Notes: generated by a model not told the origin, from the sequence alone. A stretch of DNA of 45,876 bases from Bigelowiella natans CCMP2755 (GCA_000320545.1 ADNK01000470.1:1-45876), one strand, 5' to 3'. Counted from the stretch's first letter, positions 13,023-20,866 are shown. Made by a program: numbers and translations.

Positions 13023-13734
13023 ACTCGTATGCCCAGAGAAAAGTGTGATACAGGCGAGGGAAACGCAGGAGGAGCATGGAGCATGGAAGCAGATTTAGTT
13101 CCGTTCAATAACTGAACCTTGATTTTCCATAAGCGACATGAAAACATTTGCATCAATTCATAAAAAGGATTGGAGTTATTCGCTGATGACCATCGAATTA
13201 GCAACATTTACTTCCTGACATTGTTTCATACACACAAAGTACATCAGAAGCTCATCAATGCTCATCAAAATTTGTTCTCTCCATTTTTTTGTCAACAGGC
13301 TATTTTTAGACCTGAGGAATATTATGCAAAATGCCTTGCGACCTCACGTAGCGACACGCAAATTTGACGGTTGAGCCCGATATCCTACTGAATGGATGTC
13401 GCATAAGGAATTTTTCCTTGATATGGAATCTTTCAGGCAAGGAGAGCAAAGTGCTGATATTAAGTTCTAATGTTCAACAACATCTCTGTAATGATGTTGC
13501 TCTTTTTCACTTAGATCCCGTTCCAAAGACCTGTTTCCATATGAATCTGTCCTCTTTCCCGAAATAAAAAATGCATCTTGTGCGTCGGTAATGGATGACT
13601 GAGTCATGCGTCCGCATTGAAAAAGGAGAGTTAGAAGAAATCTGAGAATCCGTGCAAGTTTTGGGGTGCGACAATGAAATATTAATCGAAGGAAAGAAGG
13701 AAAGCTTTACCTGATTTCTCGGCATTCTCGGCAA

Positions 13735-16700
13735 ATGGAGGGAGTTGACCCAAGCCGTGCTTCCAATCTGGATGGCGTGAAGGTTTCATCTCAAGTTTCT
13801 GCTCCAACCTTGCCTGTTGCTAGCACAAATGCTACTAATCCAAACGAAGCTCTTGAGGGTTCGAGGTCAGAAGGAACGTCTCCTAATAAACCGGAAGATG
13901 TGATTTCTAACAATCAACAAGCACCTGATGGAAAATTTATCGAAGATGCTAAAAAACTCCGGAAGCAATCAATCAACAAAAAGATTGAAGGTTTATCGCC
14001 AAAATCATCGTATCGTAGTTTAAAACACCAGGTAATGCGTCGAAGAGGTGGTGCTACTCGAGGAGTTAGAGTCACGAAGACCAACATGGAAGATCTTGAC
14101 AATGAGTTCTTTGCATACATCAAGAGAAATACAAGAACTTCAATAAGCAACCCGAAATCAAAGTCGATATCAAGAACAAAGTAACGTGATTCAAGTGTAT
14201 ACTACATAATTTGTTAGAGTATAAAATTCAATCTATGCAGACGGTCAACGAACAGAAATAATGTCGTAGCTAAGATTGTGGAAGAATTGACTTTGCCAGA
14301 CCTCGATCGTCGGAAAACGTTTGTACAAATTTATTATCGTTGCTTTTTCCTCCTTTAGACAGGTTGAGAAATGAAATTTTTTATTTTGTCCTCATTTCCA
14401 TTTAGGAAAGATGGAGGTTACAAATTGTCGCCTTCTGGAGTTAATCGCAATAACTCAAGAACAAGATCAAAAAGACTTTCGAGTGGTAATAAGGAAGGAA
14501 CTGAAATGAAAGAAATCAAATTGCCGACAAAACACCCAAAATCCCCCAAAACACAGCCAAGTACCCCAAAAAGTCCTGGTGAAGTCAAAGGTCACCGTAA
14601 GACAAAAAGTCTTAATGATACTCCAGAAAATGGGGGGACCAAATCAATAGGCCAGAGTGAAATCATATCACATGAACGTAAAGATAGTGCAGGTCTCACA
14701 CTTATTGAGACATCAAATTCTGGTAAAACTATGACTGTCGACACGAAATCCTTGATCTCGGGAAATATGAGAAAGAGTGATGACGATATAGTCAAGCCCG
14801 TCTTCAAAGGGGCCAGTCTAAGCAATCTTGCTGCGGCTACTGAAGAAGAGAAGAAAGCTTTGTTGGCTATAGAATGGCAAAAAAGGTTTACAGCTCGTCC
14901 TTGCTTTCATCACCCTTACTCATGATTATACACAATGCAGGACTGATGATATCGTGACACAAATATTGATATACCTGGAATCATTTAACTTCTTCTCGGA
15001 GTACCTCCACAATAGACCGTAAGAGAGGATTGTTTATGTCACTTTTCAATTAAGTTGATGATTCTTTTCTTTATGATTTTTTTTATAATTAGAGAAATGA
15101 AGACACAAAATGCCCGCATTGAATTCTGTCGACATGCCAAGTTGGCCAAGTTTCAAAAAAATGAAAAAGTCTTTTCTAAGGGTCCTGGACTTCTACATAT
15201 GATTGATTAATTCTATAACAAGGTACAGAATTAAATATGCTCATATTTTCAGGCCAGGAAGATCACAAATTCTACATAATTCTCCGTGGCGAAATCAAAT
15301 TGGTCACAGAATCATCCGAAGGGGGGAAATCAGAGGTTACCAACAAAATATTTATTATTGTAAAGTCAACATGTATCCTTATTTTTTTTCAATCTTAGAC
15401 TATAATGCTCAAGGAAAAAGAATTCTTTGGGGATTCTGAAATGGAACCAAAAGGTCCACAAAAAGCAACAGCTATAACCACCAGTGAAACAGAACTTATT
15501 ATCCTGGAAGAGGTAATTAATCTGTTCACAGCAATAATTGTAATGGGAGAATTAATGAAAACCCCGCCAGGGAGGGTACCACGAGGCATTCGTGCAGGCA
15601 GCTCATGATGAGGACATATTGGACGAAGATGTAGAATCTCTAGATTCACATAACGCACTCATTAAGCAGCAGCTAAGCTCCATTGCAAGACATTGCCGGT
15701 ACCGCCCAGATGGAAAGCCGAGATCGGTGGAGGAGAGGATCGATCTTGCTGTCGAGTATATTCGTGCTTCCCAGAACTCCCGCTCGGTGAAAAAGCACAG
15801 ATTTCGACCGTACTTGGTCCATGAAATCGACGCAATTCTAAACAATTCAACTCTCTTCTACTACATGTAAGTTCCAGAGATTGAGTAATATCATAGAGTA
15901 TTATATGAAGCATTTTTAAAATTTAGATTTCTTGCTGTAGTGGCTCTCCACCTCATACTTGCAATTGGAGAGTACACATCTGTGGAAAATGCTAGGGAGG
16001 GATCTGATCGAGATCAAAGATACGCGTTGCTTGCGGTTGAATGGTTCATTGTAACGTTCTATTCTTCGTGCTACATCGGCGAGGTACTCGTATATGTCTC
16101 AACAATTGTGCAAAGATTTATGACAGATTGACAGATAATGTATTACACATAATTAGTTCTACAACGCAGGGAGGAAAGCTTTTCTTCGAAAGCGTATTAA
16201 TATTATATGGACAGTTGTAATGTTCCTGTTTATCCTTGATCTTTTAATTGCCACCGGATCGGGATTTCAGTTCTTCCGCTTTTCTCGTGTACTAAGACCA
16301 TTCATGTTATTTCTCAAAATTCCACTGTTGAGAATTGCGTACACGATTTCCGTGCGGACTTTGTTCCGATTAATACACATCTGGATCATATTCATCATAT
16401 TCTTTCTTATCTTCTCCTGTATCGGTAATGAATAACCCAATTTTTGTTGTCGTTCAAGCATACCAATATTTTTATTCCTGTCTGTTCTAGGGTTATACTT
16501 ATTCTCGTTTCAACGAGACATATATAACGAAGAGGAATTCAATATGGGAATCGGATATCCTAATTGTCAGGGTATACTAAAGTCTTATTCTTTCATTTCC
16601 CCCCAGCATAAATACGTACTTTGACTAGGTCCGTGCATTCCCGAGGGGAATGAACCGCTGCCATTTTGGGTTTTCACAAGCTTTGCTTCCTTTGAGCAGT

Positions 16701-19700
16701 CACTCATCACTCTTTTCGTGCTCCTGACGACTGAGAACTTTCCAGATGTAAAACCATTTTACAAGCTATATCTTTCCAACATAATTTACTATCACAAATT
16801 AGGTTTCACATCCACCGTATATGGTCTCTACTTTCTACAACACCTACTTCATAGTGTTTTGGCTTTTAGGAGAGGCTTTCTTGTTACAGTTACTCCTTGC
16901 CTTAATTTTCAATGTATACAAGGTGTAAAAAATACTTTTCCTTTGTCATTGAGGTAAGAGTTTTCACGATATAACAGGATCTCATGGAGAAGTACATGCT
17001 AAAGCAAATGTGGAACGAAAGATTCGCACTTCATTTTGCATTTGAGGTGAGACGGTATCTTAAGTATAAATATTTGGAAATAAAATAGTTTATACCCTTA
17101 TCTAGTGCCTCGACGTTACTTCCAGTGGCGCTATCACTCCGGAGACTTTCACTAAATTATTACAGCGGCTAAAACCGAACTATGACTTGGATACATGTCG
17201 TGCATTCTTTGACTTCATGGACCTAGACAAGAATGGCGGAATTGAAGAGAAGGAGTTCTGTGATTTCGGAGATTTCATTACTTACGAAATTCAGGTTCTA
17301 CATGCCAGAATGGAAAGGTGTTATTCCTAAGATTATAATATTTTTTTTTTAAACAAAAGGAATCAAGTTCGGAACAATCTGTTGACACGGAGAAAGATGG
17401 TTCAAGTCGGATCCCGACAATCTTGTGCTTCTCTCCTGAGACATCAAAAAAGATCGTCTATATTCATGACAGTAATATTGTGCATTCTAAACATATCTTC
17501 ATTTGTGGAGGCCATGGCTCAGAACTCTCACTCAAAGCTTTCTCCCTGATGATTTGTATGTTAGGTGCTGCTCACGATTACTTTGTTGACGTTATAATTG
17601 TATTGGAGTTCCTTACCCTTTTATCATTTGGTACAAAAAGAAGGATTAAAGAGGAGCAAAAAATTATCAGTTCTAATAATTGTCCGTTTTCAGGTATAGC
17701 ATCTGCAAATTTAACAAGAGATGAAATTGTGGCTATCAACGCGCTACAAGTGGCGACATGGGCTCTGTTTGTCCTCGACACAGGCATATTTATTAGCATA
17801 AAGGTTACACTCGACAAGACTAATCACAGGAAGAAATTTATTTAGTTTGAACATTTGAATTCAGGGAATATGGCAAGCACTTTCCACAAGATGGTCCCAA
17901 TTTGACATTGTCGTCAACGTTGTTACCTTTGTCGGTCTCGTTTTCCTGTTCCAGGGAAATGCGTTCGGATTTTTACGATTTTTTGGTAAAAGTTGTTTCA
18001 TTCCTGAACATTTTTGCCAGTATCGTATTGAAGATATTCTTGAGTCGATTCTGTTACCATCTCAGGAATGTTGCGAGTATTCAAACTAGCTCGTTATTTT
18101 GAAAGATATTTACAAAACCGGGGCCGTGAAAATCGATTGAGCAAAAAGGAAAGGACGATACGCGAAGTCCACGAAAACGAGGGGTTGAAGGGCGAGGAAC
18201 TCGATGAAGTTGTCAATGAGAGGTAAGTAGAGGAGAGACATTAAACAAGATAAATGATCGATCCTACTCTTTCTCCCTAGCTAATTTGTAATATATCTTT
18301 TTCAGAATGGTGGAAGAGAGGAAACTTGAAACTGAAAGTGAGATATAATCTTTAATTCTTTAAGGCTGTGGGCTTAATTCATAGACAAATATTGTTGACG
18401 GTAACCCATATTCTCTTTCAGACAAGATGACCATCCTCGACACCATGCTGAATATGATTCCATGGTAATACTATGTTGGAGAGTCTTCATCGTAATCAGT
18501 ACGACGGCTGATTGAAGATTATTCTCTTAGGTTTCTCTTCATGTGTTTGGCCATGCTTTGCGTGCTTATGTATGTGTACGCTATTGTTGGAACGGAATTG
18601 GTAATTACATTTCATCTCAACTCAACGTTCTGTCGCTAACAGATGTTTTCTATTTCCAAGTTCTCGGGCCAAAACGGAAATAATTGTAACGGTGCTGCTT
18701 GGATAGAGTACGACACAGAGGCTCGATTCTGCGACTTCTTGGGAGCGTTGACAACCCTTCTCCAAGTCCTGAAATCGCTCATACCCTTTACATATGATTG
18801 CCATTATCACCATTTGAAAATGTGCGTATAAAATACCTAATTGAGTTTACTATCATTCCATTCAGATCATAACAACTTCAAACTGGCACGAAATCATGTA
18901 TCCTGCCATAAGGGATCATGGTACATCGGTTTCAATTTACTTTATAAGGTATAGTTTGAATTTTAATGAAGAGAATTGATTGAGACTATCAACGAGATAA
19001 CTTAATTTATTATGTTCTATTCAGTTTCTATTTTCTTGCCGCTATCATCATGTTCAACGTCATGACAGCAGTCTTTATCGAGATATTTCAGACAATCAAT
19101 GTGAGAAACTCGAATTTTCTTTATTTCTATGATAAAACATTCGTCTATGGTTTCAGGAGGACAGTGATTTTACGGATGAAAGTAAAAACACAGCTGTAAG
19201 GCTAGACGATGTGTTGCGACGTAAAAATGCAGATTCTATTGAAAGTGACGACGAATATATGGTCAGTCCATTTCGGGAAATAAAAGTGATATTTATAGCT
19301 GTTTTTTTTATGATAATATTTCAGCAACCTCCACAACCTCAAGACTTGAAGGAGAAGATGGATAACCCAGTAAAGGCATCCATGTCAGATACCACGAGCA
19401 TAGGTACCGCCAGCGATGCAAAAAGAAAGAGTCTCAGCTCAAGCACCTCAAGTGTAGGCAAGAAACAATATTGGGCGACTAGAAAAGGAGGCAATATAAT
19501 GTCAGATGGGATAAGAAAAGCTTTCATTCCTGAAAAATATAAGGTTGACATGAGGTGAATGTTTCCTAAATAGCAAATTCAATGAGAGAATGAATTATAT
19601 TTCAGGCAAAATTCACTGCAGAAAGTTTTGACAACAACAATAGAGCACTTTTCTTGCGAACTTCAACGCTCTCATCTTCGCCCAGACATATTCGGCCAGC

Positions 19701-19887
19701 AGCTTCAACGAAAAATCTGCTCCATTCATCGGGTGGCACTGTCTCTGCTAGTGGGAGTGAAAAAAGGGAAACAGGGAGCCTACGAAATAGGCCATCAAAT
19801 CAGAATCTAAGACCAAAATCGAGCAATGTTGGAAAAGCAGCTCCCATTACAAATAAGCTTACCTCTATAGCAGAAGATAAGAAATAG
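13735..19887 (+). CDS. Two-pore channel (TPC family) with EF-hand linker and an N-terminal cyclic-nucleotide-binding-like domain
   Basis: S4-I FRFSRVLRPF. Pore I LFVLLTTENFPD. EF-hands LDVTSSGAITPETF and MDLDKNGGIEEKEF (about 17110-17270). S4-II FLRFFGMLRVFKLARY. Pore II IITTSNWHEIMY. S6-II AIIMFNVMTAVFIEIF. CNBD-like exons at about 14940-15510. Confidence 0.9.
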
Positions 19888-20866
19888 AAGACTAGATATG
19901 ATTTTGCTACATAAAGATTTAATCGTCATGATATCTATGGATTTAATCAGAGCATTATCTAGACAACACGAAGCTCATGTATCTAATGCAGCAATCAAAC
20001 ATTATTTCATGATGCGAGTTGTCCTTGCTACCTAAGCGTCGTCGATCGAAGAGCAATCTAGCACGCTCGCTCACGCATGCTAGTATGGCCAAGATAATTG
20101 CTCTATGCATACGCCATTAGGTACGTCTAAACCATTTAATTAATCATCTGTCATGCTCTAGTCGTCTACACTGTGCTAGCTGGCTAGCGGACTAGCGGGT
20201 GGCCCAGCTAGCCAGCTAGCCGGTGGTGCTAGAGTGCGTGCCCGCACTTGCTAGCTTGCTAGCTAGCTACCTAGCTAGAGTGTCCACATTCGAACAACTC
20301 TGGAACCACGTTTGCTAGATGACAGATCAAATTTGGCCAATCAAGCAATCTAGCAATGCTTCATGAGCCGATTTTGAATGAAGTCAATAATAACGAACGT
20401 CAAGGCAACATGTCTAGATGTGCCTGCGACGAAATCCATGCTAGCATGCTAGCATGCAACTACCCATTCTACGTGTTCAGATGCATTTGTGGTTGCAGCA
20501 TGCATCACAGCCTAGCTAGCTAGACATGGTGAAGGCATTTGCATCATCGACATGCGGCTCATAAATGCACATTGTCAATCTAACACACACGTAATCATGA
20601 GTTTGATGTCTAGAGAAGTCAACTTCTACAATTACATAAGTGCATGGACAGTGCACGGAGTACGGACGAACAGCGCTTGAAAATCATATCAAGTTTATTC
20701 TTGTTCTAGTTTTGAGCAGTAGAATCTAACCACTGATTGAATAACTGTTGATTATCTTCTCCATCTTTCGATTATCCGGATAATACACGTACGAAACAAT
20801 CTTGAACTTCTTCAAAAAATAAAGCTTCCACCGCCATCACGTAACGCTGAATTCACGGAAACATCG

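What the first reader, a model, noticed from the sequence alone, without database searches (positions are those of the whole stretch)
13735..19887. Two-pore channel carrying an N-terminal cyclic-nucleotide-binding-like domain
Seen: exons at about 14940-15510 encode RTDDIVTQILIYLESFNFF...RIEFCRHAKLAKFQKNEKVFSK-GQEDHKFYIILRGEIKLV...LKEKEFFGDSEMEPKGPQKATAITTSETELIILEE. These splice in phase (GAG|GT...CAG|GGA) into GGYHEAFVQAAHDE...DLAVEYIRAS, the TPC N-terminal helix, followed by two 6-TM domains and two EF-hands. Known: animal and plant TPCs lack a CNBD, and CNG/HCN/KCNH channels carry it C-terminal to a single 6-TM unit. Inference: this is a TPC architecture I do not recognise as described, potentially integrating a cNMP-like ligand, Ca2+ and voltage.
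Basis: partly seen in the sequence, partly recalled or inferred. Interest (0 to 1): 0.85.

Follow-up and report, generated by a model that had tools for sequence, protein, structure and literature searches.

The report
Rhizarian two-pore channel with N-terminal CNBD
This is a real, expressed gene of the alga Bigelowiella natans for a two-pore cation channel that carries a cyclic-nucleotide-binding-type domain in front of the channel, a layout shared with other chlorarachniophytes and foraminifera that I found in no paper, although this species' copy has lost the key ligand-contact residues.

Summary
Window 13735-19887 (+) is one 29-exon gene with a 4248-nt CDS (1415 aa). It is Bigelowiella natans JGI model Bigna1 69064.

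- **One transcript.** Spliced RNA contigs from three studies, plus a separate JGI transcript contig, join the CNBD exons (14941-15512) to the channel exons.
- **Domains.** Pfam finds cNMP_binding (35.7 bits, cut-off 27.5), two Ion_trans repeats and a linker EF-hand.
- **TPC membership.** In a per-repeat tree, repeat I groups with TPC repeat I (100/100) and repeat II with TPC repeat II (94/77). The 16 best PDB fold matches are all TPCs.
- **Distribution.** The same layout occurs in four chlorarachniophytes and at least four foraminifera. The foraminiferal proteins also carry a weak C-terminal DEP-like match. I found no example outside Rhizaria and no paper describing it, but both searches were limited.
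- **Caveat.** Five of seven orthologues keep the canonical phosphate-binding cassette (FGE.A...R[ST/A]AT). The B. natans copy has Glu->Asp and Arg->Gln. Canonical cAMP/cGMP binding is therefore plausible for the family and doubtful for this gene.

Verdict: a new variant of a known kind, of moderate to high interest to people who study channel evolution.

The parts
13727..19966 (+). Whole transcribed unit (mRNA about 4.34 kb after splicing; 29 exons, 28 GT..AG introns of 55-100 nt)
   Evidence: RNA contigs X1, X2 and X5 start at 13727-13730. Transcript contig L013 aligns from 13727 to 19966. Exon table.
13735..14885 (+). Exons 1-3 (13735-14180, 14241-14318, 14406-14885): about 335 aa N-terminal extension, Ser/Lys/Thr-rich, with no recognised domain
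   Evidence: No Pfam family found on P0014 residues 1-335. Exon 2 (78 nt) is fixed by contig positions 455-532.
14941..15018 (+). Exon 4: N-terminal helices of the CNBD
   Evidence: Helices at residues 5-16 and 20-23 of the CNBD model. Aligns with orthologues.
15093..15181 (+). Exon 5: helix A and first beta-strands of the CNBD (holds the conserved FCRH motif)
   Evidence: Invariant Phe of the FCRH motif in all family members. The JGI model adds 10 residues here that RNA and orthologues do not support.
15253..15335 (+). Exon 6: CNBD beta-roll strands 2-4
   Evidence: Pfam cNMP_binding 14.8 bits, profile positions 17-39.
15399..15512 (+). Exon 7: CNBD beta-roll strands 5-8, including the degenerate phosphate-binding cassette (FGDSEM...PQKATA)
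   Evidence: Pfam cNMP_binding 15.9 bits, profile positions 45-77, collinear with exon 6. Cassette comparison. pLDDT is below 50 at the cassette.
15571..15866 (+). Exon 8: CNBD C-terminal helix, an acidic linker, then the TPC pre-S1 helix (EERIDLAVEYIRA...KKHRF)
   Evidence: Helix at residues 134-150 of the CNBD model. The pre-S1 helix aligns with canonical TPCs of hagfish, sponge and choanoflagellate. K..HR is invariant in the family.
15927..17046 (+). Exons 9-14 (15927-16083, 16157-16424, 16491-16571, 16629-16747, 16803-16922, 16978-17046): channel repeat I, S1-S6, with S4 RFSRVLRP and pore filter TTENFPD
   Evidence: Ion_trans on exon 10 (30.9 bits) and exon 12. P0014 residues 561-817 match Ion_trans. 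Filter alignment.
17106..17294 (+). Exon 15: EF-hand pair in the linker between repeats I and II
   Evidence: EF-hand_1 30.2 bits; EF-hand_7 29.2 bits against a cut-off of 30. Aligns with TPC linker EF-hands.
17360..19100 (+). Exons 16-26 (17360-17471, 17565-17630, 17694-17803, 17865-17985, 18066-18222, 18306-18337, 18422-18464, 18531-18600, 18661-18765, 18866-18948, 19025-19100): linker end and channel repeat II, with S4 LRFFGMLRVFKLAR and pore filter TTSNWHE
   Evidence: All junctions are listed, table 5. Ion_trans on exons 25 and 26. Alignment.
18120..18430 (+). Charged insert of about 50-60 aa between S4 and the S4-S5 linker of repeat II (end of exon 20, exon 21, start of exon 22)
   Evidence: Present in all four chlorarachniophyte proteins. 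Absent from foraminiferal members and canonical TPCs. Modelled as a long helix with low confidence in part.
19157..19887 (+). Exons 27-29 (19157-19261, 19325-19543, 19606-19887): Ser-rich cytosolic C-terminal tail and the stop codon
   Evidence: The 19543>19606 junction is seen in L013. No Pfam domain found. Poorly conserved.

Best explanation
The locus is one expressed Bigelowiella natans gene encoding a 1415-aa member of the two-pore channel (TPC) family.

Order of parts: a disordered N-terminus of about 335 aa; a cyclic-nucleotide-binding-fold domain (about residues 336-470); an acidic linker; the TPC pre-S1 helix; 6-TM repeat I; an EF-hand pair; 6-TM repeat II; and a Ser-rich tail.

Shown here:
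- The gene structure and a single mRNA.
- The CNBD fold.
- TPC membership of both repeats.
- Conservation of the layout in chlorarachniophytes and foraminifera, which implies the fusion predates the split of these two rhizarian lineages.

Inferred:
- Like other TPCs it forms a homodimer with a cytosolic N-terminus, so the CNBD and EF-hands face the cytosol.
- Repeat II S4 (R-x5-R-x2-K-x2-R; the Arabidopsis TPC1 S4 pattern it resembles is recalled from memory, not tested here) is the likely voltage sensor.
- The EF-hands give Ca2+ dependence.
- In the ancestor, and in orthologues with an intact cassette, cAMP or cGMP binding would move the CNBD C-helix. That helix runs through a short linker into the pre-S1 helix, and so could bias gating.
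- In B. natans the cassette has Asp for Glu and Gln for Arg. Here the domain most likely acts as a ligand-independent or differently liganded regulatory module, comparable to KCNH CNBHDs or trypanosome PKA-R, and not as a classical cNMP sensor.
For: - **Gene model.** Exon phases and GT..AG sites are. Spliced contigs from three studies match exon lengths exactly. Transcript L013 shows each junction. The JGI protein P0014 contains all 29 exon peptides in order.
- **CNBD.** Collinear exon hits. P0014 scores 35.7 bits against a cut-off of 27.5. Orthologues score 39-62 bits. The model shows an 8-strand beta-roll with flanking helices, and all top PDB neighbours are CNBDs of PKG, PKA-R, Epac, HCN or CNG.
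- **TPC membership.**
  - Repeat I forms a clade with TPC repeat I at 100/100 and repeat II with TPC repeat II at 94/77, both excluding every four-domain-channel repeat sampled.
  - PDB fold matches 1-16 are all TPCs (E 1e-17 to 1e-11), ahead of Cav and Nav channels.
  - The family profile's best non-family hits are two-repeat channels, including one named TPC2-like.
  - The pre-S1 helix and linker EF-hands align with TPCs.
- **Family.** Amorphochlora amoebiformis, two further chlorarachniophyte proteins, Elphidium, Reticulomyxa, Nonionella and an ENA protein all show CNBD followed by two Ion_trans repeats.
- **Cassette status.**
- **cNMP signalling in the genome.** At least 2 class III cyclase hits and 23 matches to the CNBD profile on 15 contigs.
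Against: - No functional data exist. Ligand binding, ion selectivity, membrane location and dimer formation are all inferred.
- The CNBD cassette is modelled with low confidence (pLDDT below 50), and the full model is only moderate (pLDDT 71, pTM 0.57).
- A single-sequence PDB search ranks T-type Cav channels above TPCs by summed score (85 against 61 bits).
- The tree has few canonical TPCs, several long branches, and is unrooted.
- A Lys lies next to the Gln in the B. natans cassette and might partly replace the lost Arg.
- The coupling route from the CNBD C-helix to the pre-S1 helix is not shown; model coordinates could not be inspected.
Confidence: 0.8

Rival explanations
1. The B. natans channel is itself a working cAMP- or cGMP-modulated TPC. 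On this view its altered cassette (Asp, Gln and a neighbouring Lys) still binds a cyclic nucleotide.
For: The CNBD fold is intact and the invariant FG of the cassette is kept. The domain has been kept in frame, spliced and expressed. The genome encodes cyclases and many CNBD proteins. Five of seven orthologues are canonical.
Against: Both residues that contact the ribose 2'-OH and the phosphate in known CNBDs are replaced. In PKA and HCN, Arg substitutions strongly reduce binding (general knowledge, not tested here). A second chlorarachniophyte protein (P0001) is even more degenerate, which suggests relaxed constraint on the binding site in this lineage.
Confidence: 0.2
2. The fusion is a gene-model or assembly artefact: a CNBD gene and a channel gene lie side by side and were merged.
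For: The public JGI models are imperfect. P0011 starts inside an intron, and P0014 has two wrong junctions.
Against: GT..AG-spliced contigs in three studies and a separate transcript assembly cross the 15512>15571 junction in frame. No stop or start separates the parts. The same order is found in transcripts or genomes of at least seven other species.
Confidence: 0.02
3. It is not a TPC. It would instead be an independent tandem duplication of a single-repeat channel, or half of a four-domain Cav/Nav-type channel, that happens to resemble TPCs.
For: In the PDB sequence search the T-type Cav channels score highest. The pore filters (TEN and TSN) differ from animal and plant TPC filters.
Against: The per-repeat tree, the fold ranking, the pre-S1 helix and the position of the EF-hand linker all point to TPCs. 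Cav channels have four repeats to sum over, which inflates their score. A four-domain channel exists separately in the genome.
Confidence: 0.05

Closest known systems
Plant-type TPC1 (Arabidopsis thaliana TPC1, e.g. PDB 5e1j, 5dqq, 7fhk)
   Same: Two Ion_trans repeats in one chain, an EF-hand pair in the linker between repeats, a pre-S1 helix, and an R-x5-R-x2-[RK]-x2-R pattern in repeat II S4. These are among the best fold matches (TM normalised to the target 0.54-0.61), and the sequence alignment is collinear across the pore I, EF-hand and VSD II region.
   Different: Plant TPC1 has no CNBD and no 560-aa N-terminal extension. Here filter I is T-E-N, where the canonical TPCs aligned have A or S at that position, and filter II is T-S-N-W. 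The chlorarachniophyte proteins also carry a charged insert of 50-60 aa after repeat II S4.
Animal TPC1/TPC2/TPC3 (PDB 6c96, 6nq0, 8ouo, 6v1q)
   Same: Both repeats fall in the same clades. Human TPC2 is the top fold match (E 1.8e-17). The repeat I S4 motif R.SR..RP is shared.
   Different: The named animal and choanoflagellate TPCs scanned here have no CNBD, and only some show a linker EF-hand match. Animal TPCs are known to be regulated by PI(3,5)P2 and NAADP (literature knowledge), which could not be assessed here.
CNBD channels (CNG, HCN, KCNH, plant AKT/CNGC, bacterial MloK1/SthK)
   Same: A voltage-gated-type pore combined with a CNBD-fold domain. KCNH channels offer a precedent for a CNBD-like domain that no longer binds cyclic nucleotide (literature knowledge).
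   Different: In those channels the CNBD follows S6 through a C-linker, and a single 6-TM subunit forms tetramers (PMC5806680). Here the CNBD precedes S1 of repeat I in a two-repeat subunit. By sequence it is closest to the CNBDs of PKG, PKA-R and Epac, not to channel CNBDs.
Diatom TPCL (PMC11085791)
   Same: Another lineage-specific TPC offshoot in a protist with a secondary plastid, also with a changed filter that carries an acidic residue.
   Different: TPCL lacks EF-hands, and no CNBD is reported for it. It is a separate clade in diatoms and was not sampled in my tree.
Epac (DEP plus CNBD) as a domain-pair analogy for the foraminiferal members
   Same: Foraminiferal orthologues combine a CNBD with a DEP-like domain in one protein.
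   Different: The DEP hits are below the Pfam cut-off (22-28 bits against 32.7). The domain lies C-terminal to the channel, and it is absent from the B. natans protein.

Membership tests
Two-pore channel (TPC) family | Two tandem 6-TM Ion_trans repeats in one polypeptide | tested here: met
   Ion_trans hits on exons 10, 12, 25 and 26. P0014 matches Ion_trans at 148.8 bits in 3 stretches. Two repeats were delimited at P0014 residues 560-820 and 941-1233.
Two-pore channel (TPC) family | Each repeat is closer to the matching TPC repeat than to any repeat of four-domain Cav/Nav channels | tested here: met
   Tree of 47 repeats. Repeat I plus TPC repeat I has 100/100 support. Repeat II plus TPC repeat II has 94/77 support. 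Sampling of canonical TPCs is thin: five, plus one divergent paralogue.
Two-pore channel (TPC) family | TPC fold, including the arrangement of the two repeats and the linker | tested here: met
   The model has pLDDT 71.4. Foldseek ranks 1-16 are human TPC2, mouse TPC1 and Arabidopsis TPC1. Cav and Nav channels appear only from rank 18.
Two-pore channel (TPC) family | Cytosolic pre-S1 helix and EF-hand pair in the linker between repeats (plant, protist and some animal TPCs) | tested here: met
   The alignment with hagfish, sponge, choanoflagellate and marine-protist TPCs covers both elements. EF-hand_1 scores 30.2 bits; the pair model scores 29.2 against a cut-off of 30.
Two-pore channel (TPC) family | Canonical filter residues (T-A/S-N in repeat I, V/M-N/G-N in repeat II) | tested here: inconclusive
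   The Asn and the surrounding TT.N.PD and NW motifs are kept. Repeat I has Glu at the A/S position, and repeat II has T-S-N. This is a variant filter, so selectivity cannot be predicted.
Two-pore channel (TPC) family | Homodimer; endolysosomal or vacuolar location; gating by voltage, Ca2+ or lipid | not testable with these tools
   The dimer exceeds the 1000-residue limit of complex prediction. No localisation or electrophysiology data were found.
Cyclic nucleotide-binding domain (Pfam PF00027) | Profile match above the curated cut-off | tested here: met
   P0014 scores 35.7 bits and P0011 35.3 bits, against a cut-off of 27.5. Exon by exon the scores are 14.8 and 15.9 bits at collinear profile positions.
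Cyclic nucleotide-binding domain (Pfam PF00027) | Eight-strand beta-roll flanked by an N-terminal helix and C-terminal B/C helices | tested here: met
   Secondary structure of the CNBD-only model. All top Foldseek hits are CNBDs, with probability 1.00 and TM 0.5-0.7.
Cyclic nucleotide-binding domain (Pfam PF00027) | Phosphate-binding cassette with the ribose-contact Glu and the phosphate-contact Arg (FGE.A...R[ST]A) | tested here: not met
   B. natans has FGD and Gln (then Lys) at these positions. P0001 is also degenerate. P0002, P0009, P0017, P0018 and P0025 keep both residues. The fold is a member of the family, but the ligand site in this gene is not canonical.
CNBD channel family (CNG/HCN/KCNH) | CNBD C-terminal to S6 through a C-linker, on a single 6-TM subunit | tested here: not met
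   The CNBD lies about 100 residues before S1 of repeat I, and the subunit has two repeats. It is not a member of this family.

The most novel reading that the evidence does not exclude
Rhizaria have a cyclic-nucleotide-modulated two-pore channel. In orthologues with an intact cassette (Amorphochlora, Elphidium, Reticulomyxa, Nonionella), cAMP or cGMP would bind an N-terminal CNBD and gate a Ca2+-, voltage- and EF-hand-sensitive TPC. That would link cNMP signalling directly to cation release from internal stores. It would also be, to my knowledge, the first case of a CNBD acting on a voltage-gated-type channel from the S1 side instead of through the S6 C-linker. The B. natans copy would then be a natural variant with a lost ligand site, useful as a built-in control.
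Probability: 0.35. Interest if true: 0.75.

Novelty: new variant of a known kind. Interest (0 to 1): 0.62.

Why it matters
TPCs are studied intensively as endolysosomal and vacuolar cation channels. Their known inputs are voltage, Ca2+, PI(3,5)P2 and NAADP.

A conserved subfamily with a CNBD fused upstream of S1 adds a possible fifth input. It also offers a new geometry for coupling a CNBD to a voltage-gated-type pore, since all characterised CNBD channels couple through the C-linker after S6.

The family supplies its own comparison set: orthologues with intact ligand sites, orthologues with degenerate ones, and foraminiferal versions with an added DEP-like domain. This makes the question "does the CNBD gate the channel, and how?" directly testable.

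It also matters for annotation. The public B. natans models are N-terminally truncated or mis-spliced, and no source named the protein beyond an identifier or 'hypothetical protein'.

Tried and rejected
1. **Exon-only library search.** Exon 10 alone against the 1.84-billion-protein library gave only 5 hits. It was enough to reach orthologues but not to map distribution.
2. **Word-index searches.** Runs with P0002, with a 4-sequence profile and with a 6-sequence profile found no CNBD-TPC outside chlorarachniophytes and foraminifera. The prefilter is weak, so this is not proof of absence.
3. **PDB sequence search.** It ranked T-type Cav above TPCs. I considered the 'half of a four-domain channel' reading and rejected it on the tree, the fold ranking and the linker architecture.
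4. **Raw RNA reads of run X21.** Only 8 reads were laid, from about 6% of the run. They are uninformative for strand or transcript ends.
5. **ESM Atlas look-alikes.** All scored 0.80 or below, so they are leads only. Most were TPC or other Ion_trans/EF-hand channel clusters, and one was an Endomyxa cluster that I did not follow up.
6. **Paper searches.** Seven full-text searches and two papers read found no mention of a CNBD-bearing TPC.
8. **Joined sequence.** Searches were done exon by exon by reference, or with database proteins returned by the tools (P0014, P0011). P0014 carries two small wrong junctions, which show up as low-confidence loops in the models.
9. Read laying was given 5991 letters.
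10. **Complex prediction.** Not used, because the dimer exceeds the size limit.

Full report
**1. What is in the sequence**

Three-frame translation of 13600-20000 shows a chain of short open segments on the + strand, joined by GT..AG introns of 55-100 nt. I built a 29-exon model by phase arithmetic.

- The CDS runs from 13735 to 19887, 4248 nt or 1415 codons.
- The start is the first ATG after an in-frame stop at 13675-77.

**2. Is it one transcript?**

The look-up of sequencing runs found 20 runs from 8 studies that hold part of the stretch. The best hold about 54% of the sampled words, which is roughly the exonic share of the gene.

- Single contigs of 4340 nt (X1) and 4321 nt (X2), and two contigs in X5, carry GT..AG joints.
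- Their internal coordinates match my exon lengths exactly. Contig position 1010 corresponds to window 14883, and position 1375 to window 15569. The 364 nt between them equal exons 4-7.
- Window 17863 falls at contig position 2962, as the summed exon lengths predict.
- Fifteen joints are listed and thirteen more are not shown, giving 28 introns in all.

As a direct check I fetched the JGI transcript contig that encodes P0011 (L013, 4473 nt) and aligned it to the window.

- It shows the 15018>15093, 15335>15399, 15512>15571 and 19543>19606 junctions.
- It runs from 13727 to 19966.
- It retains two introns (15182-15252 and 19262-19324). This explains why ORF callers started P0011 at an intronic ATG.

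The CNBD exons and the channel exons are therefore on one spliced mRNA.

**3. Identity of the gene and organism**

A search with exon 10 alone gave five hits. Cluster look-ups then showed the following.

- The window's protein is Bigelowiella natans JGI model Bigna1 69064 (P0014, 1431 aa).
- There are also truncated versions: P0011, P0016 and P0015.
- P0014 contains all 29 exon peptides in order.
- It adds 10 residues between exons 5 and 6, and 6 residues between exons 23 and 24.
- The RNA contigs do not support either insert, and both align to gaps in every orthologue.

**4. Domains**

Exon by exon:

| Exon | Pfam family | Score |
|---|---|---|
| 6 | cNMP_binding, profile 17-39 | 14.8 bits |
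| 7 | cNMP_binding, profile 45-77 | 15.9 bits |
| 10, 12, 25, 26 | Ion_trans | 30.9 bits on exon 10 |
| 15 | EF-hand_1 | 30.2 bits |

On the database protein P0014, cNMP_binding scores 35.7 bits against a cut-off of 27.5. Ion_trans scores 148.8 bits, and the EF-hand families also match.

A CNBD-only AlphaFold model (pLDDT 73) has three N-terminal helices, eight strands and a C-terminal helix. Its Foldseek neighbours are all CNBDs: PKG, PKA-R, Epac, HCN and CNG, with probability 1.00. By sequence, an orthologue's CNBD is closest to those of PKG, PKA-R and Epac.

**5. Is it a TPC?**

I delimited the 6-TM repeats in 19 proteins. These were seven CNBD-bearing proteins, five canonical two-repeat channels (hagfish TPC2-like, sponge TPC1-like, a choanoflagellate, and two unnamed), a CNBD-less B. 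natans paralogue, and six four-domain channels. I then built a maximum-likelihood tree of 47 repeats over 243 columns with LG+C20.

| Grouping | Support |
|---|---|
| Repeat I of the CNBD proteins with TPC repeat I | 100/100 |
| Repeat II of the CNBD proteins with TPC repeat II | 94/77 |
| CNBD proteins monophyletic, repeat I | 99/98 |
| CNBD proteins monophyletic, repeat II | 94/88 |
| Chlorarachniophyte subclade | 100/99 |
| Foraminiferal subclade, repeat I | 100/99 |
| Foraminiferal subclade, repeat II | 99/98 |

Every four-domain-channel repeat falls outside both TPC clades.

Other lines agree:

- A 921-residue model (pLDDT 71.4, pTM 0.57) has human TPC2, mouse TPC1 and Arabidopsis TPC1 as its 16 best PDB matches. 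Cav and Nav channels follow from rank 18.
- The family profile's best non-family hits are two-repeat channels, including a TPC2-like protein at 117 bits, against 36 bits for a Nav channel.
The linker EF-hands align too.

The one discordant result is a single-sequence PDB search in which T-type Cav channels outscore TPCs (85 against 61 bits). I attribute this to summation over two matching stretches in four-repeat targets.

**6. The family**

The same order, CNBD then pre-S1 helix then repeat I then EF-hands then repeat II, is found in these proteins.

| Protein | Source | Length | CNBD score |
|---|---|---|---|
| P0002 | Amorphochlora amoebiformis | 1510 aa | 49.4 bits |
| P0009 | ENA | 1634 aa | 62.2 bits |
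| P0001 | MMETSP transcript | 1494 aa | 16.7 bits, degenerate |
| P0017 | Elphidium margaritaceum | 1838 aa | 51.4 bits |
| P0018 | Reticulomyxa filosa RFI_08106 | 1460 aa | 39.3 bits |
| P0025 | ENA | 1556 aa | 51.4 bits |
| P0099 | Nonionella stella | 1639 aa | 50.0 bits |

- Bolivina argentea contributes fragments.
- Several of these come from transcript contigs, so the fusion is supported at the transcript level in several species.
- All foraminiferal members also show a sub-threshold DEP match at the same C-terminal position (22-28 bits against a cut-off of 32.7).
- B. natans has a second, very divergent two-repeat channel without a CNBD on G000:C2335, and a four-domain channel on C3708.

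**7. The ligand site**

In alignments of the CNBDs, five members keep FGE.A...R[ST/A]AT. These are P0002, P0009, P0017, P0025 and P0018.

B. natans has FGD.E...QKAT, with Glu replaced by Asp and Arg replaced by Gln, followed by a Lys. P0001 has lost the motif altogether.

From established knowledge of PKA, PKG and HCN CNBDs, the Glu contacts the ribose 2'-OH and the Arg contacts the cyclic phosphate, and changes to the Arg strongly weaken binding. I did not test this here.

The ancestral domain was therefore probably a true cNMP sensor. The B. natans domain is more likely a CNBHD-like module, or one with a different ligand. Precedents are KCNH channels and the trypanosome cAMP-independent PKA-R, which is among the fold hits (6h4g).

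The genome does have cNMP machinery: at least two class III cyclase hits and 23 matches to the CNBD profile on 15 contigs.

**8. Other features**

- Repeat I S4 is RFSRVLRP, shared with TPCs.
- Repeat II S4 has R-x5-R-x2-K-x2-R. I recall this as the Arabidopsis TPC1 pattern, but that comparison is from memory.
- Filter I is TTENFPD in all rhizarian members, with Glu where the canonical TPCs aligned here have Ala or Ser.
- Filter II is TTSNW or TTNNW.
- Chlorarachniophyte members alone carry a 50-60-aa charged insert between repeat II S4 and the S4-S5 linker.

**9. Mechanism**

Shown:

- The architecture.
- Expression as one mRNA.
- Family membership.
- Conservation across two rhizarian lineages.

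Inferred from TPC structures:

- The channel is a homodimer.
- The N-terminus is cytosolic, which places the CNBD and EF-hands on the same side.
- Repeat II acts as the voltage sensor.
- The EF-hands act as the Ca2+ sensor.

Proposed:

- Movement of the CNBD C-helix is passed through the acidic linker to the pre-S1 helix, and from there to VSD I, the repeat I S4-S5 linker or the EF-hand domain.
- In B. natans this coupling would be constitutive, or driven by something other than cAMP or cGMP.

**10. Novelty**

Seven full-text searches and two papers on TPC evolution gave no description of a CNBD-bearing TPC.

The proteins themselves are public, but no source named them beyond an identifier or 'hypothetical protein'.

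I rate this a new variant of a known kind. It is a lineage-specific TPC subfamily with an added regulatory domain in a position not used by the known CNBD channels (PMC5806680).

The library lacks most subscription journals, and I could not run a true architecture query. An existing description therefore cannot be excluded.

**11. Constraints**

- No step needed referral.

Noticed in passing
window 15182-15252 and 18601-18660; proteins P0014, P0011: The public JGI models of this gene are faulty. P0014 (Bigna1 69064) adds 10 residues between exons 5 and 6, and 6 residues between exons 23 and 24. P0011 and P0016 start at an ATG inside the intron before exon 6. Neither RNA contigs nor orthologues support these versions.
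   Followed up: yes
window 15182-15252 and 19262-19324 (L013 1091-1333 and 3722-4109): One assembled transcript retains two introns. The first breaks the reading frame. The second is 63 nt, in frame and without a stop. This may reflect incompletely spliced or alternative isoforms.
   Followed up: partly
window 17472-17564 and 17631-17693: Two introns of 93 and 63 nt are in frame and free of stops, so one reading frame stays open from 17339 to 17842. RNA contigs show that both are spliced out. A reader without RNA data would read through them.
   Followed up: yes
window 18120-18430: A charged, probably helical insert of 50-60 aa lies between S4 and the S4-S5 linker of repeat II. It is present only in the four chlorarachniophyte proteins. 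This is an unusual place for an insert in a voltage-gated-type channel, and I have no explanation for it.
   Followed up: partly
P0017 1474-1537, P0018 1286-1349, P0025 1176-1238, P0099 1375-1436: Foraminiferal orthologues carry a weak but consistently placed DEP-like domain C-terminal to the channel (22-28 bits, cut-off 32.7). CNBD plus DEP is the Epac regulatory pair.
   Followed up: partly
G000:C2335:26384-29549 (L011 1885-5049): B. natans has a second two-repeat channel without a CNBD: Ion_trans, a weak EF-hand match, then Ion_trans. It is nearly intron-free and very divergent, with branches above 2 substitutions per site in the tree.
   Followed up: partly
G000:C3708:157974-162818 (L012 2975-7819): An open frame of about 1614 aa encodes a four-domain Cav/Nav-type channel. 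It has at least three recognisable Ion_trans repeats and a PKD_channel-like match.
   Followed up: no
window 14558 and 14696: Single-base differences between RNA contigs and the window: C>T in run X2 and T>C in run X1. These are probably strain or allele differences. No DNA run of the same strain was checked.
   Followed up: no
Atlas cluster, rank 2: An Endomyxa (Rhizaria) cluster of Ion_trans proteins about 1049 aa long is among the nearest look-alikes (score 0.79, a lead only). It might be a further rhizarian relative with a long N-terminus.
   Followed up: no
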